Notes under the pieces: model-generated
Told to the model about the DNA's origin: nothing
Database searches by the model: none
Seen by the model: only the letters and a program-made list of their open reading frames with translations
Program-made: the position numbers and the translations under genes
NCBI GenBank assembly: GCA_002269645.1
Contig: NIVC01000567.1
Location: forward strand, 434,001-498,000
Reading direction: 5' to 3'
Origin: Macrostomum lignano
Taxonomy: Eukaryota
DNA length: 64,000 bases
Shown here: piece after piece, positions 49,908 to 63,434 of the stretch
Layout: each line of letters starts with the position of its first letter
Position numbering within the stretch: position 1 is the first letter of the stretch

Positions 49908-52900
49908 ATGTCCACTGCAACAACCGACACAACCCAGACGCCGAAGACTCGCGTCCTTAGCAACCGCTACCGCGTGGTTCGCCAAATTGGCAAAGGCGCT
50001 TTCGGCACGGTGCACCTTGTTGAAGATTTGCGCAGCTCGGAAGAGAAATTCAAAGTGCTGAAAGAAGTTCAAATTGGTGAAGTTGACCCGGATGAAACTC
50101 TGGAAGTTGTGCACGAGGCCAAGCTGCTTGGAAAGCTTGATCACTCAGCTATTCTGAAGTTTTACAATTGTTTTATGGGTAGGTTGGCTCATTAAGTATT
50201 TGTTTTCCTTTAAAAACAACTTTTCCCTGAAAAAAGATTGGGATTCCTCGTGGCAGTAAATTTTACAAACCGGTGGCCTTGAAATCGGGATTCCCGTTGA
50301 GCAATCTTTTAAATAGGATTTCCTCGCCATTCAGTAGCATGGAAAGTGAGATTTTTCATTTGATGACATTATGGGTGGACTTTTCCATTAAGTGACCTTG
50401 AAAGTGAGGATTCCCTTTTGAGTGAAATTAAAAGTAGCTAAGGATGGATTTTCGCTGTGTCCCTGAAAGTACGAGCCAGGATTTCCCGCTAAGTGACCTT
50501 GAAAGTACGATTTTCCGTCGAGCGACCTTGGAATCAGGAATTCCGTTGCGCGACCTTAAAAGTAGGATTCCCCGTTGAGCGACCTTGAAAGTAAAGGCTT
50601 TCCAGTAAAGTGACCTTGAAAGTAAAATTTTCCGGTAACCGACCTTGAAAGAATATAGGATTTCCTATTAAGCGACCTTGAAAGTATAGGATGGTTTTCA
50701 CTTGAGTGACCTTGAAAGAAATTTCCGCTTAATACGTTGAAAATGATTCCGCGTTAAGTGACCTTGAAAGTAGAATTTGACTGTCCACTTGTGGCCTCCG
50801 ATTTTTATTGATGCTTTTTTCGCCAAAAACAACACAGAACCGCCGTCGTTTTGCATCGTGACCGAGTACTGCGACGAAGGCGACCTGGACCAGTGCATCA
50901 GCCGTCTAAAGCAGGCAGGACACAACCTACCGGTGCAAACCACCATCCGATGGTTCATTCAAATCCTACTAGGCGTTGACTATTTGCACGGTCGACGGAT
51001 TTTGCACAGAGATTTGAAAACTAAAAACATATTTTTGAAAAGTGGTACAGTGAAAATTGGCGACTTTGGTATCTCAAGGGTGCTGATGAGCAACTCCGAT
51101 ATGGCGTCAACTTTTCTTGGCACGCCGTACTTTATGAGTCCGGAACTGCTCAAACATGAGGGTGAGCTGGGGAGGTCTGCGGCATGCCATCTACTTCCCC
51201 ATTCATTCTCTATTCTACCTCTATTCTTTCTCTATTCTCACTCCCTTCATTCTCTATTCCCACCTCCCTTCATTCTCTATTCTCACCTCCATTCATTCTC
51301 TATTCTCACCTCCATTCATTCTCTATTCTCACCGTTATTCATTTTCTATTCTCACCCCCATTCATTCTCTATTCTCACTCCCATTCATTCTCTATTCTCA
51401 CTCCCATTCATTCTCTATTCTCACTCCCATTCATTCTCTATTCTCACTCCCATTCATTCTCTTTTCTCACCTCCACTAATTCTCTATTCTCACTCCCATT
51501 TATTCGCTATTCTCACCCCCACTAATTCTCTATTCTCACTCCCATTCATTCTCTTTTCTCACCTCCACTAATTCTCTATTCCCACCAGTGTTGGGCAAGT
51601 TACTCAAAAAAAGTAACTTGCGTTACTGTAACTTAAGTTACCACTTTTTAAAAAGTAACTTACGTTAGCCTAGTAACTTTGAACAAAAACCCGGTAACTT
51701 TTAAGTTACTTCCGTTACTTACTTCCGTTACCTATGTTATTAACAAAATTTTCTGCTTTTTTTAACATTGCAAATGTGATGGAACAGCACAAATGATCGC
51801 GAAAGCCAGGAGGAAGAATACAACAACATTAATTTCAGTAACTGTATTAAATTTTAATCACTTTAGGCCCTTTCCGTAAAAAGAAGAGAAGCTGAAGGTC
51901 AGAAACGTTAAAGGCAAAACGCAATTTAATTTTTAATAACATTATAAGTTATAATACACAAGGACAACTTAACGTAACTTCAGTTGTCCTTGATAATACA
52001 TCGCTCGTAATAAGTATCTGGCTTTACTCCACTCTACAGTCTGCTTTACTAGTATTTTTATTTATTTTCAATTATTATCATTAATATTAAATTATTGTGC
52101 AGTGCAGTGCAGTGCCAGTGGACTTTAGTGGTGTAGCCAGGGAGGCCGCCTTAACAATCGTTGGGGCGGCAACTTCACCCCACCTGCAAGACACCCCACC
52201 TGGGGGGGTGGGGTTGGGCGTGGCGGGTACCAAAAACCATGAGGCGATTTGAGTGCCTGCGGCGCTTAAATGAGTGCCTGCGGCGCTTAAATAAGTGCTT
52301 GCGGCGCTAAAATGAGTGCCTGCGGCGCTAAAAGTGGCAATAACATGAGGCATGGCCAGCCAGGCCAACCCGCCCCCCCCCAATTAAAATTCCTGGCTAC
52401 GTCGATCACTGAGTGGATTTGTGGAGACTACAGATGAATTTCTTTCTTTGGTTGTTTGTTTCTAAGAACTAAACAAAATATTTTTATTAACTTAAAAACG
52501 AAAAGCAAAAATATTTTACCGAAAATAACAAAGTAAAAACATGTTTCAAGTATTTCTTTATTAATTACAGCGTAATACCGTATGATATTATTCACTTAGT
52601 TTTGAATTTAGGAATGAAAAATGCTAAAAATGTGACAACTGGCGTAATAGCTAAGCATATCAGTTTTAAATTTAAATATTGCGATTGTTGCAAAGTAACT
52701 GTAACGGACTTCCGAAATTTGAGTAACTTACCGTTACTCCGTTACCAAAATAGGAAAGTAACTTGCGTAAGGAACGCTTTACGAAAAAGTAACTTGCGTT
52801 ACCATTTACAAGTTACTCGGTAACGGAAGTGCCCAACACTGATTCCCACTCCCATTTATTCTCTATTCTCACCGTTATTCATTTTCTATTCTCACCCCCA

Positions 52901-55900
52901 TTCATTCTCTATTCTCACTCCCATTCATTCTCTATTCTCACTCCCATTCATTCTCTATTCTCACTCCCATTCATTCTCTTTTCTCACCTCCACTAGTTCT
53001 CTATTCCCACTCCCATTTATTCTCTATTCTCACCCCCACTAATTCTCTATTCTCACTCCCATTCATTCTCTATTTCCACCTCCATTAATTCTCTATTCTC
53101 ACCCCATTCATTCTCTATTTCCACCTCCATTAATTCTCTATTCTCACCCCATTCATTCTCTTTTCTCACCTCCATTCATTCTCTATTCCCACTCCCATTC
53201 ATTCTCTATTCTGACTCCCATTCATTCTCTATTTCCACCTCCATTAATTCTCTATTCTCACCCCATTCATTCTCTTTTCTCACCTCCATTCATTCTCTAT
53301 TCTCACTCCCATTCATTCTCTATTTCCACCTCCATTAATTCTCTATTCTCACCCCATTCATTCTCTTTTCTCACCTCCATTCATTCTCTATTCTCACTCC
53401 CATTCATTCTCTATTTCCACCTCCATTAATTCTCTATTCTCACCCCATTCATTCTCTTTTCTCACCTCCATTCATTCTCTATTCTCACTCCCATTCATTC
53501 TCTATTTCCACCTCCATTAATTCTCTATTCTCACCCCATTCATTCTCTATTTCCACCTCCATTAATTCTCTATTCTCACCCCATTCATTCTCTTTTCTCA
53601 CCTCCATTCATTCTCTATTCCCACTCCCATTCATTCTCTATTCTCACTCCCATTCATTCTCTATTTCCACCTCCATTAATTCTCTATTCTCACCCCATTC
53701 ATTCTCTTTTCTCACCTCCATTCATTCTCTATTCTCACTCCCATTCATTCTCTATTTCCACCTCCATTAATTCTCTATTCTCACCCCATTCATTCTCTTT
53801 TCTCACCTCCATTCATTCTCTATTCTCACTCCCATTCATTCTCTATTTCCACCTCCATTAATTCTCTATTCTCACCCCATTCATTCTCTTTTCTCACCTC
53901 CATTCATTCTCTATTCTCACTCCCATTCATTCTCTATTTCCACCTCCATTAATTCTCTATTCTCACCCCATTCATTCTCTTTTCTCACCCCATTCATTCT
54001 CTATTCTCACTCCCATTCATTCTCTTTTCTCACCTCCACTAATTCACTATTCCCACTCCCATTTATTCTCTATTCTCACCCCCACTAATTCTCTATTCTC
54101 ACTCCCATTCATTCTATTCTCACCTCCATTCATTCTCTATTCTCACCTCTATTCATTCTCTATTCTCACCTCTATTCATTCTCTATTCTCACCTCTATTC
54201 ATTCTTTTTTCTCACCTCCATTCATTCTCTCTTCTCATCCCATTCATTCTCTATTCTCACTCCCATTCATTCTCTACTCTCACCCAAATTCATTCTCTAT
54301 TCCCACCCGCCCCGACCTGTTCCAGGCTACAACGCCAAAAGCGACATTTGGAGTGTCGGCTGCATTCTATACGAGATGTGCGCCCTGGAGCACGCATTCA
54401 AAGGCGCTGGTCTGATGGGGATTCTATTCAGCATCTGTGGCAACCCCTGCCCGGTGATCCCAGACCGCTACCCTCCCGAGCTGCAGGCGGTTCTGGAGAA
54501 GATGCTAGCCAAAGATCCGCAGGACAGACTCAGCGCCAGAGAGGTGCTCAAAGAGCCGTTCGTACGCGAGCAGATGCAGAGCCTGCGCGAGGCTGTTGAG
54601 TCTCAGAGCGGCGGCAACCGGCAGCAGCAGCTGCTGATGGAGGAGACAATTAACGAAGCCGCAAGCAAAAACCTACTATCCGTGCTGCAGGAGAAACCAA
54701 CGCTCAACAGTCTGGAGTTCGAATCCCGAGCGATGGCGGCGGCCGCAGCGGCTGCCGCTGAAGTCACTCTGAAGCCCAACAGCGACACGGTCCGGCAGAA
54801 GGTCAAGGGACCCGGCCAGGCCGGTGGAGACTTCAATGCCCTCAGCCCGCACCAGAAGATGCTGTTGCGAAAGCAACGCGAGGCAGACGACCGCGCCAGA
54901 GAGCTGGCCACACAGGCCGCCGAGACGAGCCGTAGAAACGCCGAGCTGGCTAAGAAGTTCGGCAATCGGACTTTTCGACCGAGCGGCAGCGAAGGCAGAA
55001 CGGCGTTTCCTCAGCCGCAAGACGACCTGCCAGTGCGGAACCAACGCTTCTTGGAGGAGCAGCAGCAGCAGAGGCAACAGCAGAAGCACACCGCTTGGGA
55101 GTCGCATGACTACGAGCCTCGCCACAATGAAGGTCGCCGAGATTCTGAAGAAGACTATTACGGCAATGACGGGGATGACAGCGACGAGGAAGACGATCTG
55201 GTGCCTGCCAGTCTGGCTCGACGGCAGCCGACTCGGCCAACTGCCGTGGCTTCAAGCAGAGACGAGCGGCCCATCACGCCGATGAAAATTGACCTCTATC
55301 AGCAGATGAATCGGGCTGGCAGTTTTAAAGAGGCCGCCATGGAGAATGAAGAGCTGGCTGACACCTACTATCAGGTGCTGGACTAATTTTGATTTTAGTC
55401 ACTTTATATAGCATAGCATAGAATAGCATAGAACTTTATAGCGTAGAATTATTGGTGATAAGTCATAGAGATATGAAATCGACACTCCCCCAAAATTTTT
55501 AGAAAATCGGCAGAAAATTTTCGATAGTTTCCAAATATGTACAGGACCTGTCGCGACTGTCTTAGTCATTTTTTAGTTCATCTGCACTTGTCTCTGTTTA
55601 CTCTGTTTTCTCTCCGTATCTGTCTGGTTCAGTCTTGTTATTTTTCTCTCTCTCTATCCCTCGCTGCCTTCTGATTGGCTCTTCAATCTCGCCTCCTTGT
55701 CTTATCTACAAAGGGGGGGTGGAGTGCGCGATTGAGGAAAGAGACGAGATTGAAGAGCCAATCAGAAGGCAGCGAGGGATAGAGAGAAAAAATAACAAGA
55801 CTGAACTAGATAACAGAGAGGGAGAGATAACAGAGTAAGCAGAAACAAATGCATATGAACTAAGAAATGACTAAGAAAGTCGATTAGATAGCAATAACAA

Positions 55901-56847: not shown

Positions 56848-57004
56848 GAGCATAACTGCGGGCTTGTGCTGACAGCATAACTGCGAGTCTTCTGCTGCCG
56901 CATCCATCACTGCTGGGCTGTGCGGCTCTTCGCTGCCTGCCGCTTCATGTTTGATAATGTACTCATTTTGTTAATCTGCTTTTAGTTTCAGTTCTGACCT
57001 GTCT

Positions 57005-58040
<1,036 letters not shown>

Positions 58041-59049
58041 CAATCAGTCGCCTTCAACCGGAGTCTTCATTCCTCTCTGTGACTTGAAATTTGCTCCGAC
58101 AGCACAGAACCAGTTTTCTTACTGTTTTTGTGTGTCTCCAAGGATTTCAGAATACTAGCTGTTTCACAATTTCCTTTCATTGGCACCAACTTTTTTATTG
58201 TTTTTAGCAAGCAATCAGTTCACATGCTGATAGTAGTGTAAATTGTGTTTGTTTTAATATTTGATATGTATCGAAAGTTGATTAGCCAGTTAGACGGACA
58301 ACACAGATAATCCCGATATTAAACCGTTTGATGTGACTCTGAACATTATCACAAAGACTGTTTTGTTTTGTTATAGCAATGGTCTCCAGTGTCAAGTTTT
58401 AAGTGCAGTTTATTCTGCGACGCCATCTATATCTATATTTACCAGAATGAGATAAGTTAAAAGTGCACTGAACTGCCGTTAACTGTGTGTAATAATTTTG
58501 AATATAATTTGCAAAGGAATCAACCATTTTTCCATTGCTACTTGTCAAACTCAAGTTTTCGATTTGAACGCATTCATAAAAGTGTTATAAATATAACAAA
58601 ATCGTCATCTTTTCGGTCCAAAAAGTCGTTCGACTGTAAATTATTGAAACTCATTAAAGAGACCTAAAATATAGGCAAATTTACTTATTTACCTTTGTGA
58701 AGTGTAAATTTGTTTTTGATTGATTAAGCAGTGAACCAAAAAAGTGTCTGTGGGGCTAAAGTTAGAATTAAAATTAAATTAAATTAAAGTACAGGTAAGC
58801 AGATGAAAAACAATTAAAGCCTGAATGTTACGCATTGGGTCATACGTTTTTTTAAATTTCACTGCCAGAGCTCTTCCGATCTACCAGTATGTACAATTGT
58901 ACATGTATGTATGTATATGTACCTGCTACTTAAACTGCTTATACTAACTACCTAATAAATCGTACAATTTTTATAGTATCAACAGAAAAAATGTGATAAA
59001 TTACCAGCATATGTCTGTGTTAGCGAGCGACAGCCCATCGCTCTCGCAG

Positions 59050-62038
59050 TCACGATGAGGCACTCAGGAACCTGTGCCGAAGCAGCTCCGCAGTGTCCGC
59101 TCGCTTCCTCGGGTCATAGTCTACGCACCTGAGGTAGAAGTCCTTCAGGCCGGCTGAGAACCCGTCCGCAATCCGAGGCATCTCCTGCCTTCTATCCCTC
59201 AGAATGCCAATATTTACACTTGGCTGGTTCCTATCAGGAGGCTGCATGGCCGTCATCTCAAACACCGTGCAGCCGAAGGCCCACACGTCGGTCTTGGCTG
59301 AGTATGGAAGCGATTGGACTTCTGTGTCGAACAGCTCCGGAGCTATGAAGTAGGTGGTGCCTTTTGGACCGAAGCCTGTGCTCAGACCGCTGCTCTTCCC
59401 GACCTCCTTGGCCAAACCGAAGTCGATCAGCTTGATGACGCCCTCGTTGGTGAGCATCACGTTGTTGCAGTTTATATCCCGGTGCAAGATGGCGCCCTCC
59501 AGATTGCAGTGCAGGAAGTTTAGACCTGAGCAGATCTGCAGATAAAGTTGCAACTATTAATTTTGGATGCCAACAAACTGATCCCACACTGATCCCACAC
59601 TGATCTCACACTGATCCCACACTGATCCCTCACCGATTCCACACTGATCCCAGGCTGATCCCACACTGATCCCACACTGATCCCACACTGATCCCTCACC
59701 GATTCCACACTGATCCCAGGCTGATCCCACACTGATCCCACACTGATCCCACACTAATCCCATACTGATCCCACACTGATCCCACACTGATCCCACCCAT
59801 TCCAGGCAATGCCAGGGAACCCAGAGACGCACCTGTCTGGAGAAGTCCCTGACCCCGGACTCCTTGAACGGCTTGTTCTGACGCTGCATCAGCTCAAAGA
59901 GGCTGTGACCCGAGACCAGCTCGGTGAAGATGTACAGCCCATCCGACTTCTGCTCGCACTTGAGGAACTGCACAATGTTGGGATGTGAAATTCGCTTGAG
60001 GATCTCAACTCCCCGCTTCTCCATCAGAATTATCTTCAGTTTCCCTGCAGCTTGCCTCGCATGGCTCAGTGGTAATTTTTTGACAGCCACCGTCTGGTTG
60101 CGGTCTGTGAGAGCCTTGTACACCTTGCCGAATCCACCACGGCCGATGAGCTGCTTCTTGTTGTCCTGCCGGATGAAGTCCCAGTCGGTGAAGTTGGGGT
60201 CCAGCTGCTTCCTGACGCTGAGAACATGAGGTGAAGGAATTCGTTAAATTTTGTGTGGCTTGGGGCTTTCTGAGTACTTTGGAGTCACTCAGCCTTCTGC
60301 GTCACCACCCTTCTGCGTCCCCACCATTCTGCGTCACCATATTTTAAGCGCGGACTCACCGAGTCTCCTCAGGCGGTTCCACCTCGGATGCCGAAGTCGG
60401 TCCAGGCGGCGGCTCGACGCGGTCCCGAGCTCGCGGGCGGGGACGCGGAGCTGCAGCTCTGTGGGGGCGAATGAGGGAAAATGTATGAGGGATTTTGCTA
60501 AATTTGTACTTAAATTCGACCTGAGTACGATGACTTAAATGACTTAAAGAGTAGAATGAAAGTATAACGATCTTTAAGCTACTCAAAATTTACTTGATCA
60601 CTTTCTCCACTCGTTCTCTGGCTGCTGACAAATTAAATGCTTTGTAGAAGTTCTCAGTCAGGACTCACCCAGCTGAGGCGGCAGTCGGCGCTGAGCTGCC
60701 AGCGGGAGGCCGAGAGGCTTCGAGCCGCCGCTGCGTGGAGGAAATCCAGGCCCGCTTTGCTGACCGGTCTGTGTAGCACCGCCGACTCTCAACAGCATCA
60801 GCCGGTGTTCTGCCCCACATGTTCATCAAGCTGAACATTTCGGCTCCGATTTGGTCAAAAATGAACTGAAGAGAGTCGACTGGCTGATGCTGAGCGGCCC
60901 AATGGACGACCGTGTCACCGTCTTTGTCAGGAACTGTGAGACAGTCGTTGCCGAGCTCCTTCACCAGCCACTTCAGATTTGAATTGTCAGAATTCATTGT
61001 AGCAATGTGAAATGCTGTTCTATCCCAGAATCCTTTCAGCCGAAAGCAGTCAGTTCCGATCTGTTTCTTGATCCACTCCAGCGACTCGACGCCCTGATGT
61101 ATAGCGGTCAAATGGACGGCCGTGCTACCGTATCTGTCAGGAACTGTGAGACAGTCGCTGTCGAGCTCCTTCACCAGCCACTCCAAATTTGAACCTTCAG
61201 ACTTCTGAGCAGCAAAATGAAATGATGCTGTACCACTGTTTGACTTTAGCCGAAAGCAGTCAGTTCCGATCTGTCTCTTGATCCACTCCAGTGACTCGAT
61301 GCCCTGATGCTTCTTGGCAAAATGGACGGCCGTGTCACCGTCTCTGTCAGGAACTGTGAGACAGTCGCTGCCGAGCTCCTTCACCAGCCACTCCAAATTT
61401 GAATTGTCAGACTTCTGAGCAGCAATGTGAAATGCTGTTCTATCACTCTTTGTCTTTAGCCGAAAGCAGTCAGTTCCAATCTGTCTCTTGATCCACTCCA
61501 GCGACTCGATGCCCTGATGCTGAGCGGCCAAATGGACCGCCATGTTACCATCTTTGTCAGGAACTGTGAGACAGTCCCTGCCGACTTCCTTCACCAGCCA
61601 CTTCAGACAAGAGTTGCTTTTTCTGTTCCCAGCGGCAAAGTGAGCGACTCTCTTTCCCCATCTATCGACAATTCTCAAGCAACCTCGGCCTCCCTTCTCT
61701 TTAACCAGCTTCATCCAAGACTCGTCCTGATGCTGGGCTGCTAAGTGAACTGGAGTCTCACCCCTATCATTTCTGAATTTCAGACAGTCGGGTCCGAATC
61801 TGTCAATCAGCAGCTCCAGGCACGACGAACTCACCGGCTTGCAGGCCACGTGATGGACCAGCGGCATTTTGCGAAGCTCTTCAAAAGGAAAGTCTTGCTT
61901 GTCGAACCCGCCCACCTCCAGCTCGATGTTGCTGCCGACCTCACCGCACAGTCGCTGCAGCTCCTCGCTGTCTCCAGCCTCCAGTGTCGCTCTGAGCTTC
62001 CGCTCCATCTCCATGGATACACTCCAAGCGTTCCCCAT
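59050..62038 (-). CDS. Ankyrin-repeat / MAP3K(STE11)-like protein kinase fusion, ~779 aa, predicted N-myristoylated (MGNAWS)
   Basis: Exons 62038-60669 (ankyrin repeats), 60458-60360 (Pro/Arg linker), 60217-59833 (IGRGGFGKVY, VAVKK, SHPNIVQF, IFTELVSG) and 59535-59050 (HRDINCNN, DFG, APE, DVWAFGC). Canonical gtgagt/gtgagt/gtgcgt donors and cag acceptors join in frame (2340 nt). Confidence 0.85.
59578..59793. repeat. 11-bp CCCACACTGAT repeat, ANK-kinase intron 3
   Basis: Direct inspection. Confidence 0.92.
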
Positions 62039-62514
62039 GCTGGCTTCTCCTAGCAGCGCTTCTCTGCCGATCTTCTGTCTGCCGCAGCTGTTCCACACGG
62101 CTTCAGACTGAGTGCTTTGCTCTTCTTCAAGCGAATTTGCCTGCCAGCTCAGCAGCAGCAGAAAAAGTCCCGCTGTCACGGACTGAAATCTCTGAGCTCT
62201 CCCTGTGCAGAGAAATTTGTTTAAATGGAGTTAAACAATGAGAGCTCACTGTGGCTGCGTGCTCGGCATAGCAAGTGCATTGTCAGTGGGCAGGGGTGAA
62301 GGGACGGCAGCTGAGACACGAGGGGAGAGAGAGATGGAGAGGGGAGGGAGGGCAGGGCTGAGGCCTTGATTCAAGCAGAGTTCTGTGATCATTTTCAATT
62401 TAGTTTGCAGATGAGATGCATGGCAAATATTTTTCTGAAAATGCTTGACTGAGGATTTTTCTGTTGCTGAATTCAAATGAAAGGAAAATTCCGCTTGGGT
62501 TTGCCACTGACACT

Positions 62515-62974
62515 TTACATCAGTATCTAACAGGTGAAAGCAGTATCTAACAGGTGACATCAGTATCTAACAGGTGACATCAGTATCTAACAGGTGACAT
62601 CAGTATCTAACAGGTGACATCAGTATCTAACAGGTGACATCAGTATCTAACAGGTGACATCAGTATCCAACACGTGACATCAGTATCTAACAAGTGACGT
62701 CAGTATCTTACAGGTGACATCAGTATCTAACAGGTGACATCAGTATCTAACAGGTGACATCAGTATCTAACAGGTGACATCAGTATCTAACAGGTGACAT
62801 CAGTATCTAACAGGTGACATCAGTATCTAACAGGGGACATCAGTATCTAACAGGTGACATCAGTATCCAACACGTGACATCAGTATCTAACAGGTGACAT
62901 CAGTATCTAACAGGTGACATCAGTATCCAACACGTGATATCAGTATCTAACAGGTGACATCAGTATCTAACAGG
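62515..62974. repeat. 20-bp minisatellite CAGTATCTAACAGGTGACAT
   Basis: About 23 units sharing the TCTAACAGGTG core with the 5.3, 6.8 and 14 kb arrays. Confidence 0.96.
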
Positions 62975-63434
62975 TTGCCGGGCTCTTCTGCTAATATTTT
63001 ATGTAATTTTCGTTTGAATTTGATTGTAAAAATTACAATTCCGAGTTAGACAAAGCGAAATAAATATTGCAGGAGTAATGGCAATTCAAGTAATAAATAT
63101 TAGAGGAAAGGAGGACAGAAGTAGAAAGTACTCGCAAAAAGAGCTGGAGACAGGTGTCAAAGTAAATCAATTTTAAGCAATTGAAAAAATTAAAACAATT
63201 CAACAATACAAATGAAAAATGATTACTAATACAAATATTTTAGAGGTGTAAAAAACTGTTTACGCGCTACAGTGCAAAGAGGAATATGGGATGATTAGCC
63301 AAACAAATAATATAAGTGGGGTATTTTTCATTGTAGTCAGTATGAGTCTTGAAAGAGGCAATGTTTGGGAAGCTGGGAGGAGGCCTATATCCCCAGCGAG
63401 GTCCTGAGATCAATATTTCAAGTTATTCATGGCT

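What the first reader, a model, noticed from the sequence alone, without database searches (positions are those of the whole stretch)
59050..62038. Myristoylated ankyrin-repeat / MAP3K-like kinase fusion: candidate membrane-anchored sensor-kinase
Seen: the ankyrin ORF and the two kinase ORFs, listed separately in the ORF track, splice into one 779-aa protein through a Pro/Arg-rich linker exon. The first ATG after the upstream acceptor gives MGNAWS, which fits the MGxxxS N-myristoylation consensus. Known: ankyrin-kinase fusions such as ILK, TNNI3K, RIPK4 and LRRK use TKL-type kinases. This kinase looks STE11/MEKK-like by eye (GRGGFGKVY, HPNIVQF, IFTELVSG), and I do not recognise the architecture as a conserved animal gene. 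Inference: a lineage-specific receptor in which the repeats bind a ligand and the kinase domain signals, as in innate immune sensors.
Basis: partly seen in the sequence, partly recalled or inferred. Interest (0 to 1): 0.72.

Follow-up and report, generated by a model that had tools for sequence, protein, structure and literature searches.

The report
Flatworm ankyrin-repeat STE kinase family
This is an intact gene of the flatworm Macrostomum lignano that joins about eleven ankyrin repeats to an STE-type protein kinase; it belongs to a large family seen so far only in this worm, and the binding face of the repeats changes far faster than neutral sites, which makes the family a candidate set of intracellular recognition proteins, although no function has been tested.

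Summary
Four minus-strand exons (62038-60669, 60458-60360, 60217-59833, 59535-59050) join in frame through GT-AG introns into a 779-aa protein. It has an N-terminal helical cap, about 11 ankyrin-like repeats, a disordered Pro/Arg linker and a complete protein kinase domain. The window is Macrostomum lignano: a UniRef fragment is 100% identical to three blocks of the model. The gene is one of dozens of M. lignano paralogues with this architecture. All named relatives are from this species.

The kinase belongs to the STE group, not TKL. Its closest outside relatives are plant MEKK-type MAP3Ks. In the PDB, SLK/MST3 rank slightly above MEKK2 and ASK1.

New here: the repeats form 70-aa double units that are nearly identical in framework but hypervariable at the canonical ankyrin binding positions. 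Surface dN is about 0.45-0.47 against framework dS of about 0.07.

- MGNAWS fits the myristoylation pattern, but only 2 of 12 close paralogues with a full N-terminus have Gly2.
- There is no second membrane signal.
- This copy has Asn in place of the catalytic-loop Lys.
- Immune function is untested.

The parts
62517..62975 (-). 20-bp minisatellite (about 23 copies, unit ATGTCACCTGTTAGATACTG on the gene strand, contains a CACCTG E-box) about 300-760 bp upstream of the putative 5' exon; part of the duplicated unit
   Evidence: TRF. The same array lies upstream of the paralogues in L003 (9006-9396) and L004 (9144-9402, 5304-5725) at 88-94% identity.
62203..62516 (-). Promoter-proximal or outron region conserved among paralogues, ending in the candidate acceptor AG (62204-62203)
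   Evidence: About 88% identity to L003 and L004 across 62888-62228, and to L001 from 62229. Sequence read.
62039..62202 (-). Putative 5' UTR (164 nt, no ATG)
   Evidence: More than 90% identical to the 5' regions of L001-L004. The upstream reading frame is not conserved among paralogues.
60669..62038 (-). Coding exon 1: start codon, MGNAWS, N-terminal helical cap, about 11 ANK-like repeats (residues about 60-445) and the start of the linker. The paralogue-type start codon (Met9, CCATGG) is at 62014-62012.
   Evidence: AF2 pLDDT above 90 over residues about 10-445, with regular helix pairs every 35 residues.
60944..61573 (-). Three complete 210-nt (70-aa) double-ANK units: framework conserved, hypervariable at unit positions 7, 8, 10, 18, 41, 42, 43 and 53
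   Evidence: TRF period 210, 3.4 copies, 85% matches. Unit extraction and entropy. dN/dS.
60459..60668 (-). Intron 1 (GT...AG)
   Evidence: Donor context identical to L003.
60360..60458 (-). Coding exon 2: 33-aa Pro/Arg-rich linker (AAAPRPRPRARDRVEPPPGPTSASEVEPPEETR), 99 nt, so frame-neutral
   Evidence: The homologous exon is present in L003 (14169-14267) and in proteins P0002/3/6/8/9. It is absent from the genomic loci L001, L002 and L004. AF2 pLDDT about 33. The UniRef fragment P0333 of this very gene skips it.
60218..60359 (-). Intron 2, with a 16-bp repeat (60284-60339) that is much expanded in paralogues
59833..60217 (-). Coding exon 3: conserved DPxFTxWDF lead-in and kinase N-lobe (GRGGFGKV, VAVK Lys536, alphaC Glu556)
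59536..59832 (-). Intron 3, mostly an 11-bp minisatellite (59577-59796, 20 copies)
59050..59535 (-). Coding exon 4: kinase C-lobe (HRDINCNN at 59484-59461, Asn640 codon AAC at 59472-59470, DFG, APE) and stop codon TGA at 59052-59050
   Evidence: Homology with paralogues ends about 20 nt after the stop.

Best explanation
The region is one intact four-exon gene of Macrostomum lignano. It encodes a soluble 779-aa protein: an N-terminal helical cap, about 11 ankyrin-type repeats, a roughly 45-residue disordered Pro/Arg/Ser linker and a C-terminal STE-group (MEKK/STE20-like) Ser/Thr kinase domain. It is one member of a multigene family known only from this worm, spread by duplication of a roughly 4-kb unit (gene plus upstream minisatellite), in at least some cases in tandem.

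Proposed mechanism (inferred). The concave face of the ANK solenoid is a diversified recognition surface. Each 70-aa double repeat is a near-identical scaffold carrying about 8 hypervariable contact residues. Repeat units differ in number between paralogues. Binding of a target to this face controls the tethered kinase, by relief of autoinhibition or by clustering, and the kinase then signals, plausibly into a MAPK-type cascade.

In this particular copy an extra 17-nt segment creates an upstream start codon and an MGNAWS N-terminus. That N-terminus could be N-myristoylated and give weak, reversible membrane association. The catalytic-loop Lys is Asn, so its activity may be altered.

Shown: gene structure, domain composition, kinase group, lineage restriction and family size, repeat-number variation, and surface-restricted excess of non-synonymous change. 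Inferred: ligand binding, the activation mechanism, myristoylation, and any role in non-self recognition.
For: Gene model:
- In frame, with GT-AG introns.
- The junctions match those of paralogue L003/P0003.

Domains:
- Pfam Pkinase 5e-55 plus Ank families.
- AF2 mean pLDDT 83. The ANK solenoid is above 90, the linker (residues 447-492) about 33 and the kinase about 85.

Kinase group:
- PDB sequence hits: SLK, STK10, MST3/4, ASK1.
- Family profile: SLK 191.6, MST3 186.8, MEKK2 175.7, ASK1 171.2 bits, with no TKL kinase among the best 60.
- Foldseek: SLK, ASK1, TAO3, STK10.
- The best named non-Macrostomum sequences are plant MAP3Ks at 35-39% identity.
- The catalytic residues G-loop, Lys536, Glu556, HRD, Asn643, DFG and APE are invariant across 14 diverse family members.

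Lineage restriction:
- In the exhaustive scan of 1.84 billion representatives, every named protein that combines this kinase with ANK repeats is from M. lignano.
- About 75 of the 120 best profile hits are M. lignano entries.
- The window itself is M. lignano, because P0333 is 100% identical in three blocks.

Diversifying surface:
- Variability is confined to unit positions 7, 8, 10, 18, 41, 42, 43 and 53. These correspond to positions 1, 2, 3, 5 and 13 of the ANK consensus, in the beta-turn and the start of helix 1; positions 2, 3, 5 and 13 are among those randomised in designed ankyrin binders (my knowledge).
- For a surface set fixed in advance, dN is 0.47 against dS 0.07 and dN 0.04 for the rest. 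None of 10,000 random codon sets reaches this value.
- For nearest-unit pairs between loci, surface dN is 0.45 against framework dS 0.069. It also exceeds the kinase dS of the same loci, 0.03-0.30.
- There are 35 distinct surface signatures among 36 unique units.
- Paralogues carry 2-5 spacings between double-unit starts in the deposited proteins, and 11 complete units in the genomic ORF of L003.

Purifying selection on the kinase: omega 0.2-0.7.

Precedents: fungal NLR ANK repeats show the same combination of internal conservation, repeat-number polymorphism and positive selection on the concave face (PMC4986451). RNase L pairs ANK ligand sensing with a kinase fold.
Against: - There is no RNA evidence for this locus and no expression or functional data for any family member.
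- The dN/dS estimates are simple Nei-Gojobori counts on 23 non-independent units from five loci. Recombination and gene conversion were not modelled, and conversion could depress framework dS.
- Loops are also the least constrained part of an ANK repeat, although relaxed constraint alone cannot give dN above dS.
- This copy's repeats are less uniform than those of its paralogues (73% aa identity between units, against 83-88%).
- Its kinase omega against paralogues is fairly high, 0.41-0.53.
- It has Asn in place of the catalytic-loop Lys, so it could be a weakly active or inactive member.
- Gly2 is not conserved in the family.
- No ligand, no substrate and no partner domain (death, TIR, NACHT) was found in any member to tie the family to immunity.
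Confidence: 0.55

Rival explanations
1. One reading: an N-myristoylated, membrane-anchored sensor kinase. Lipidation of Gly2 would place the protein at a membrane, where the repeats would detect a ligand.
For: - MGNAWSV fits the N-myristoylation pattern.
- The ATG at 62038 is the first in the putative 5' UTR and has the stronger Kozak context: A at -3 and G at +4, against T at -3 for the paralogue-type ATG at 62014.
- P0010 has the same MGNxxSV start, encoded in its genomic locus.
- AF2 leaves residues 1-5 flexible.
Against: - Only 2 of the 12 close paralogues with a readable N-terminus have Gly2. L001, L003 and L004 lack the 17-nt segment that carries the upstream ATG.
- More distant members start MESRL, MEPEL and so on.
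- No neighbouring Cys or polybasic stretch provides the second membrane signal that stable anchoring needs (two-signal rule, my knowledge).
- No hydrophobic segment is present.
- The 5' end of the mRNA is unknown. If the M. lignano spliced leader, which ends in ATG (PMC8629364), is added at 62203/62202, it opens a 9-codon upstream ORF ending at 62176.
- The pattern is of low specificity.
Confidence: 0.2
2. A fast-evolving reproduction-related (for example sperm or seminal) kinase family. The surface diversification would reflect sexual selection or conflict in a hermaphrodite rather than pathogen or non-self recognition.
For: - Reproduction-related genes evolve rapidly in Macrostomum (title and abstract of PMC7336406, listed).
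- Lineage-specific kinase expansions with germline expression are known in other invertebrates (my knowledge).
- The family shows tandem duplication and a kinase omega of 0.2-0.7.
Against: - None of 12 family gene identifiers occurs in the germline/neoblast supplementary table of PMC5816591. That file is truncated as held, so this is weak evidence.
- The proteins have no signal peptide, so they are not secreted seminal proteins.
- Surface-restricted hypervariability on an otherwise frozen repeat scaffold is best documented for recognition receptors.
Confidence: 0.2
3. This copy is a kinase-impaired scaffold (pseudokinase) or a decaying duplicate. The ANK domain may still bind partners, but signalling is not by phosphotransfer.
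For: - HRDINCNN lacks the catalytic-loop Lys.
- The repeats are more diverged than in the paralogues.
- Omega is about 0.45 against the paralogues.
- Broken or chimaeric relatives exist: P0149 with HRN/GFG, a frameshifted exon 4 in the copy at L002 690-1171, and P0028 fused to an integrase.
- RNase L shows that ANK + pseudokinase can be a working design.
Against: - All four exons are open and all other catalytic residues are intact.
- The Asn variant is not a one-off lesion. HRDINCSN occurs 38 times among the fetched family sequences, as often as HRDIKSSN (36) and HRDIKCSN (34). The subfamily that carries it keeps the Lys, Glu, Asp, Asn and DFG residues at only 39-43% identity to this protein.
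- Omega stays below 1.
Confidence: 0.15
4. The ANK ORF and the kinase ORFs are separate genes, and the fusion is an artefact of reading splice sites by eye.
For: No transcript evidence for this locus was available.
Against: - More than 25 deposited M. lignano proteins have the same collinear ANK-linker-kinase order.
- P0333 itself joins the end of the ANK exon to the kinase exon.
- A transcript contig from another data set (P0128) encodes ANK + kinase in one uninterrupted ORF.
- The kinase exons have no upstream start codon or promoter of their own, and exon 3 starts in mid-codon.
Confidence: 0.03

Closest known systems
Animal ANK-repeat kinases of the TKL group (ILK, TNNI3K; also RIPK4/ANKK1 and LRRK1/2)
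   Same: Ankyrin repeats and a kinase fold in one cytosolic polypeptide. In ILK and TNNI3K the ANK domain is N-terminal and the kinase C-terminal, as here (my knowledge).
   Different: The kinase here is STE-group, not TKL. Pkinase scores above PK_Tyr_Ser-Thr, and no TKL kinase is among the best 60 PDB profile hits or the best 50 structural hits. Those genes are conserved and single-copy or low-copy across animals. This one is a species-restricted multigene family with hypervariable repeats.
RNase L (2-5A-dependent ribonuclease)
   Same: N-terminal ANK repeats that sense a ligand, followed by a kinase-fold domain. It is an innate-immunity sensor, and it is the only PDB entry aligned over the whole model (6m13, 725 columns, rank 40).
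   Different: RNase L has a pseudokinase and a C-terminal KEN ribonuclease domain, whereas this protein ends with the kinase. The match is weak (TM about 0.3, 14% identity). RNase L repeats are not hypervariable, and the gene is single-copy (my knowledge).
Highly internally conserved, hypervariable ANK/TPR/WD repeats of fungal NLR (STAND) proteins
   Same: Near-identical repeat scaffolds, repeat-number polymorphism, multigene families, and positive selection restricted to a few positions on the concave binding face (PMC4986451; compare).
   Different: Fungal proteins couple the repeats to a NACHT/NB-ARC nucleotide switch and death or enzymatic effector domains, with the repeats C-terminal. Here the repeats are N-terminal and coupled directly to a kinase, there is no NOD domain, and the organism is an animal.
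STE-group kinases: MEKK-type MAP3Ks (plant MAPKKK1/ANP1, MEKK2, ASK1) and STE20 kinases (SLK, STK10, MST3/4)
   Same: Closest kinase domains by sequence and by predicted structure. HRDIKxxN and GTPYFMAPE-type motifs occur in most family members. ASK1 also aligns with the lead-in before the Gly loop (query residues 6-9 onward).
   Different: Only 29-39% identity. None of these relatives carries N-terminal ANK repeats. The subgroup (STE11 or STE20) is unresolved. This copy has Asn in place of the catalytic-loop Lys.
DAPK1 and the ANK-containing NEK kinases of Giardia (my knowledge, not tested here)
   Same: They show that ANK repeats are also joined to non-TKL kinases. The Giardia family is likewise a large lineage-specific expansion.
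   Different: In those proteins the kinase is N-terminal and the repeats C-terminal, and the kinase groups differ (CAMK, NEK). NEK1 and NEK7 score below the STE kinases here.

Membership tests
Eukaryotic protein kinase superfamily (Pfam PF00069) | Significant match to the full-length kinase profile | tested here: met
   Pkinase E = 5.2e-55, 187 bits (cut-off 31.7), residues 510-775, profile positions 3-263 of 263. AF2 gives a kinase fold with TM about 0.85 to ASK1.
Eukaryotic protein kinase superfamily (active Ser/Thr kinase) | Catalytic residues: Gly-rich loop, VAIK Lys, alphaC Glu, HRD Asp, catalytic-loop Lys (HRDxKxxN), Asn, DFG, APE | tested here: inconclusive
   GRGGFG, Lys536, Glu556, His-Arg-Asp 636-638, Asn643, DFG 656-658 and APE are present and invariant in the family. 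The catalytic-loop Lys is Asn640 (HRDINCNN). The Asn variant is common in the family. Activity was not assayed.
STE group of protein kinases | Closest relatives by sequence and structure are STE7/11/20 kinases; HRDIKxxN and GTPxxMAPE-type motifs | tested here: met
   The best PDB hits are STE kinases before NEK1/NEK7 appear: the first 35 with the single sequence and the first 37 with the family profile. Foldseek top hits are SLK, ASK1, TAO3 and STK10. Paralogues have HRDIKSSN and GTPYFMAPE; this copy has HRDINCNN and GTTYFIAPE.
STE11 / MEKK-type MAP3K | Groups with MEKK/ASK kinases rather than with STE20 kinases | tested here: inconclusive
   The best named hits outside Macrostomum are plant MAPKKK1/ANP1-like proteins. 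In the PDB, however, SLK (191.6 bits) and MST3 (186.8) exceed MEKK2 (175.7) and ASK1 (171.2). No phylogeny with a labelled kinome was possible.
STE11 / MEKK-type MAP3K | Phosphorylates a MAP2K | not testable with these tools
   Needs a biochemical assay.
TKL-group ANK kinases (ILK, TNNI3K, RIPK4/ANKK1, LRRK) | Kinase domain of TKL type | tested here: not met
   PK_Tyr_Ser-Thr scores below Pkinase (138 against 187 bits). No TKL kinase is among the best 60 PDB profile hits or the best 50 Foldseek hits.
Ankyrin-repeat proteins | Tandem roughly 33-residue helix-turn-helix repeats forming a solenoid | tested here: met
   Ank_2 2e-26, Ank_4 2e-24, Ank 1e-14. AF2 pLDDT above 90, with about 11 regularly spaced helix pairs. 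The repeat length is 35 residues, and each pair of repeats forms a 70-residue unit.
N-myristoylated proteins | Met-Gly start with a permissive residue at position 3 and Ser/Thr/Ala/Gly/Cys/Asn at position 6 | tested here: met
   MGNAWSV. It is the first ATG after the candidate acceptor, in a strong context.
N-myristoylated proteins | Actual modification by N-myristoyltransferase; conservation of Gly2 among homologues | tested here: not met
   Conservation fails: Gly2 occurs only in the window gene and P0010 among 12 close paralogues with a readable N-terminus, and in none of the distant ones. The modification itself cannot be tested with these tools.
Hypervariable, internally conserved repeat receptors (fungal NLR type) | High internal repeat conservation, repeat-number variation, and positive selection on binding-face positions | tested here: met
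   Units are 73% (this gene) to 88% (L003) identical in amino acids and 85-93% in nucleotides. Unit number varies among paralogues. Surface dN is 0.45-0.47 against framework dS 0.07.
Hypervariable, internally conserved repeat receptors (fungal NLR type) | NACHT/NB-ARC nucleotide-binding switch domain | tested here: not met
   No such Pfam match in this protein or in 10 diverse family members.
RNase L-like sensors | C-terminal KEN ribonuclease domain after the ANK and kinase-fold domains | tested here: not met
   The protein ends 4 residues after the kinase profile match. All paralogues end ...FLSASS.

The most novel reading that the evidence does not exclude
The family is a previously unrecognised class of animal intracellular recognition receptors. 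These would be germline-encoded, combinatorially diversified ankyrin-repeat 'binders' wired directly to a MAP3K-like kinase, used by a flatworm for pathogen, effector or allo-recognition. This would be convergent with fungal NLR repeat diversification and with plant receptor kinases, but would use neither LRRs nor a NOD domain.
Probability: 0.25. Interest if true: 0.85.

Novelty: new variant of a known kind. Interest (0 to 1): 0.6.

Why it matters
Flatworm innate immunity and self/non-self recognition are poorly known at the receptor level. A family that couples a hypervariable ankyrin binding face directly to a signalling kinase, found so far in one species only, would be a new way for an animal to build a diversified recognition repertoire. 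It would also be a natural counterpart of designed ankyrin binders.

M. lignano has RNAi and transgenesis, so the idea can be tested at the bench. Even if the function lies elsewhere, for example in reproduction, the family is a clean animal example of strong diversifying selection on a repeat scaffold. It also adds an STE-group kinase to the list of kinases joined to ankyrin repeats.

In public databases these proteins carry only automatic names ('hypothetical protein', 'Protein kinase domain-containing protein'). This particular gene exists there only as a 269-aa fragment.

Tried and rejected
- Expression and function from the literature. Full-text searches for Macrostomum + ankyrin + kinase, for repeat diversification in flatworms and for six family gene identifiers found nothing on this family. 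Twelve identifiers were absent from the supplementary table of PMC5816591, but that file is truncated as held, so the result is uninformative.
- Source of the ANK+kinase transcript P0128. The contigs come from runs SRR28338163 and SRR28338164. The run numbers occur in no paper, and the 5' ends show no M. lignano spliced leader. The species stays unknown.
- Alternative splicing of the linker exon. Rejected as the explanation for paralogues with and without the linker, because the exon is absent from the genomic loci L001, L002 and L004 and present in L003. Skipping in this gene itself remains possible (P0333).
- Transmembrane or secreted receptor. Rejected: no hydrophobic segment.
- Other immune-type domains in family members (death, TIR, NACHT). 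None found in 10 diverse members.
- A second paralogue inside the window. tblastn finds only weak kinase similarity at 50960-51160 and 54328-54564, which belongs to an unrelated NEK-like gene.
- Other long ORFs of the window give no credible Pfam match and are mostly low-complexity repeats.
- My first dN/dS run used hypervariable positions chosen from the data, which is circular. I repeated it with a position set fixed beforehand from the designed-ankyrin literature, and again with nearest-unit pairs between loci.


Full report
**1. The observation**

Joining 62038-60669, 60458-60360, 60217-59833 and 59535-59050 gives a 2340-nt reading frame with no internal stop, and the protein is 779 aa. 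Each intron begins GT and ends AG after a pyrimidine-rich tract. All the quoted peptide strings are present.

Pfam finds a full-length protein kinase domain (Pkinase, E = 5e-55, residues 510-775). It also finds several ankyrin families over residues about 60-430.

**2. Organism and gene model**

A search of 5.8 billion protein clusters returned 28 Macrostomum lignano entries. Nearly all have the same collinear ANK-linker-kinase order, at 32-89% identity in the local alignments.

A later profile search returned P0333, a 269-aa UniRef fragment from M. lignano. It is 100% identical to the model in three blocks: residues 357-457, 491-611 and 662-708. The window is therefore M. lignano. This gene is publicly known only as that fragment.

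I fetched four paralogue loci from assembly GCA_002269645.1. In L003 the exon ends lie at homologous positions with near-identical flanks:
- ...CTGG|GTGAGTCCTGACTGAGA
- ...CAGACAG|GTGCGTCTCT
- ...CTGCAG|ATCTGCTCAGG

The deposited protein from that locus reads across all of them.

The 99-nt linker exon has a genomic homologue in L003 only. It is absent from L001, L002 and L004, whose proteins lack the linker. Its presence is therefore a difference between gene copies rather than alternative splicing. Skipping in this gene cannot be excluded, because the exon is frame-neutral and P0333 omits it.

I had no RNA reads for this locus.

**3. The N-terminus**

The candidate acceptor AG is at 62204-62203. 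The following 164 nt hold no ATG. The ATG at 62038 has A at -3 and G at +4. MGNAWSV fits the usual N-myristoylation pattern.

Aligning the 5' regions of five loci shows that a 17-nt segment carrying this ATG is present only in the window and in L002 (P0010, MGNTRSV...). L001, L003 and L004 lack it and start at the downstream CCATGG (MATEMERK). The window retains that ATG as Met9 at 62014. More distant members begin MESRL, MEPEL and so on.

Gly2 is therefore a minority, recent feature. No Cys or basic cluster lies next to it, and the protein has no hydrophobic segment (maximum 19-residue hydropathy 1.12).

About 30% of M. lignano genes are trans-spliced to a leader that ends in ATG (PMC8629364). 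If that leader were added at 62203/62202, it would open a 9-codon upstream ORF ending at 62176. The true 5' end matters and is unknown.

**4. The kinase**

- With the single sequence, the best PDB chains are SLK, ASK1, STK10, MST3/4, STK25 and TAO3. NEK1 appears only at rank 36.
- A profile of 14 diverse family kinases gives SLK 191.6, MST3 186.8, STK10 179, MEKK2 175.7, ASK1 171, PAK 168 and NEK7 167 bits. No TKL kinase is among the best 60.
- Foldseek on the AlphaFold model gives SLK, ASK1, TAO3 and STK10.
- In the large sequence collections, the best named non-Macrostomum relatives are plant MEKK-type MAP3Ks at 35-39% identity: Ceratopteris, Dioscorea, Eucalyptus, Camelina MAPKKK1-like and Tarenaya ANP1-like.

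The choice between STE11 and STE20 is not settled.

Across the family the Gly loop, Lys536, Glu556, HRD, Asn643, DFG and APE are invariant. The exception is the catalytic-loop Lys. This gene has HRDINCNN (Asn640, codon AAC at 59472-59470), whereas most close paralogues have HRDIKSSN. The Asn form is common: HRDINCSN occurs 38 times among the fetched family sequences, against 36 for HRDIKSSN and 34 for HRDIKCSN. It is fixed in a subfamily that keeps all the other catalytic residues. It is therefore not simply decay, but its effect on catalysis is unknown.

Kinase dN/dS between this gene and four paralogues is 0.41-0.53. That is constrained, but loosely for a kinase.

**5. The family**

The exhaustive HMMER scan of 1.84 billion representatives listed 40 proteins that match both halves of the query. 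Every one that carries a source name is from M. lignano.

Two further proteins are unnamed:
- P0229 is a MetaClust entry.
- P0128 is an RNA-seq contig from SRR28338163/4. It encodes 16 canonical ANK repeats plus this kinase type in one ORF, and it is 54% identical over its full length to M. lignano P0112. It is probably an orthologue in an unidentified species.

More distant M. lignano members (P0112, P0130) also have canonical ANK repeats. The window's subfamily, with its divergent 35-residue repeats, looks derived from them.

The duplicated unit runs from about 62975 to 59030. It comprises the gene plus about 750 bp upstream, including a 20-bp minisatellite. Copies can lie in tandem: a second kinase 3' end sits 7 kb upstream of P0010's gene in L002, and P0001 is a read-through of two adjacent copies.

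**6. The repeats (the main new result)**

The ANK region contains 210-nt (70-aa) double units (TRF). In 24 such units from 11 proteins, variability is confined to unit positions 7, 8, 10, 18, 41, 42, 43 and 53. The other 62 positions are almost invariant.

Counting from the conserved Asp/Gly-x-x-Gly-x-Thr motif, these are positions 1, 2, 3, 5 and 13 of the ANK consensus. They lie in the beta-turn and at the start of the first helix. This region forms the concave binding face, and positions 2, 3, 5 and 13 are among those randomised in designed ankyrin binders (established knowledge; see also PMC4986451).

Nei-Gojobori counts on 23 units of coding DNA from the window and four paralogue loci gave:

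| Codon set | dN | dS |
|---|---|---|
| Data-chosen hypervariable positions | 0.84 | 0.25 |
| Framework (remaining positions of that split) | 0.041 | 0.066 |
| Surface set fixed in advance | 0.47 | 0.14 |
| Rest of the unit (same split) | 0.042 | 0.070 |
| Surface, nearest-unit pairs between loci | 0.45 | 0.15 |
| Framework, nearest-unit pairs between loci | 0.045 | 0.069 |

The set fixed in advance comprised the designed-binder positions of both repeats, which avoids circular choice. None of 10,000 random 12-codon sets reached its dN.

Surface dN also exceeds the synonymous divergence of the kinase exons of the same loci, 0.03-0.30. Homogenisation of the framework by gene conversion therefore cannot explain the excess away.

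There are 35 different 8-residue surface signatures among 36 unique units. Unit number differs among paralogues: 2-5 spacings between unit starts in the deposited proteins, and 11 complete units in the single genomic ORF of L003.

AlphaFold models the whole ANK region as one confident solenoid (pLDDT above 90). It is joined to the kinase by a disordered 45-residue linker.

Caveats: the units are not independent, recombination was not modelled, and the test is crude. The effect size is large.

**7. Interpretation**

The anatomy is a variable protein-binding solenoid tethered to a signalling kinase. The closest evolutionary parallel is the internally conserved but hypervariable ANK/TPR/WD repeats of fungal NLRs, which are under positive selection on the same face (PMC4986451). 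The closest architectural parallel in the PDB is RNase L, where ANK repeats sense a ligand and a kinase-fold domain mediates activation.

I therefore think the most likely mechanism is target recognition by the ANK face controlling an STE-type kinase. That is inference. Nothing here shows a ligand, a substrate, an expression site or an immune role.

The main rivals are:
- a reproduction-related, fast-evolving family;
- a kinase-impaired scaffold, for this particular copy;

**8. Novelty**

ANK-kinase fusions, STE kinases and hypervariable repeat receptors are each known. What appears undescribed is their combination: a large animal multigene family, found so far in one species, that joins diversifying ANK repeats directly to an STE kinase without a NOD domain. 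I found no paper on it, and the database entries carry only automatic names. I rate it a new variant of a known kind, with moderately high interest. M. lignano has RNAi and transgenesis, so the hypothesis is testable.

Noticed in passing
window 62517-62975; L003 9006-9396; L004 9144-9402 and 5304-5725: A 20-bp minisatellite (about 23 copies here), each unit containing a CACCTG E-box, lies a few hundred bp upstream of the gene. It is conserved at 88-94% identity upstream of at least two paralogues. It may be a shared regulatory array that travels with the duplicated unit.
   Followed up: partly
window 49908-55386, + strand: The neighbouring gene is an unrelated NEK-type Ser/Thr kinase, split over at least three exons (49908-50195, about 50870-51160, 54376-55386). 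Its best PDB matches are NEK1 and NEK7. The ORF that continues after its second exon runs into a low-complexity repeat.
   Followed up: partly
window 56988-58158: A (GACA)n/(TGTC)n microsatellite of about 1.1 kb lies between the two kinase genes. It produces long spurious ORFs in several frames.
   Followed up: no
window 59577-59796 and 60284-60339; L001 7776-7957; L003 14372-14707: Introns 3 and 2 carry 11-bp and 16-bp minisatellites. The 16-bp repeat has 3.4 copies here but is expanded to roughly 180-340 bp in paralogues.
   Followed up: no
L003 10660-13180: The genomic ANK exon of paralogue Mlig011736 contains 11 complete double units in one open frame. These include a repeated block of unit types (SRGD / KYGT / ILGD). 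The deposited protein P0003 has only 4-5 units. Either the transcript-based model collapsed the repeats or the assembly expanded them.
   Followed up: no
L002 129-1171: The 3' part of another family member lies about 7 kb upstream of P0010's gene, in tandem arrangement. Its exon 4 aligns in two frames that overlap by one base. This suggests a frameshift, either a pseudogene or a long-read indel error.
   Followed up: no
L005 and L006 (Logan contigs from SRR28338164 and SRR28338163): Transcript contigs encode P0128: 16 canonical ANK repeats plus this kinase type in one ORF, 54% identical over its full length to M. lignano P0112. It is probably an orthologue in another species. The species could not be identified.
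   Followed up: partly
P0112 (M. lignano, 1180 aa): A distant family member has canonical ANK repeats followed by two tandem kinase domains (610-872 and 902-1180).
   Followed up: no
window 62176-62204: If the M. lignano spliced leader, which ends in ATG, is added at the AG at 62204-62203, it creates a 9-codon upstream ORF (MGELRDFSP) ending at 62176, out of frame with the main ORF. The six bases before the junction (GCACAG) fit the published trans-splice acceptor motif [T/C]TNCAG only in its CAG.
   Followed up: partly
P0028 and P0020 (M. lignano UniRef entries): Some database models fuse degraded family members to an integrase catalytic domain or to long low-complexity N-termini. These are probably chimaeric predictions or copies next to mobile elements.
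   Followed up: no
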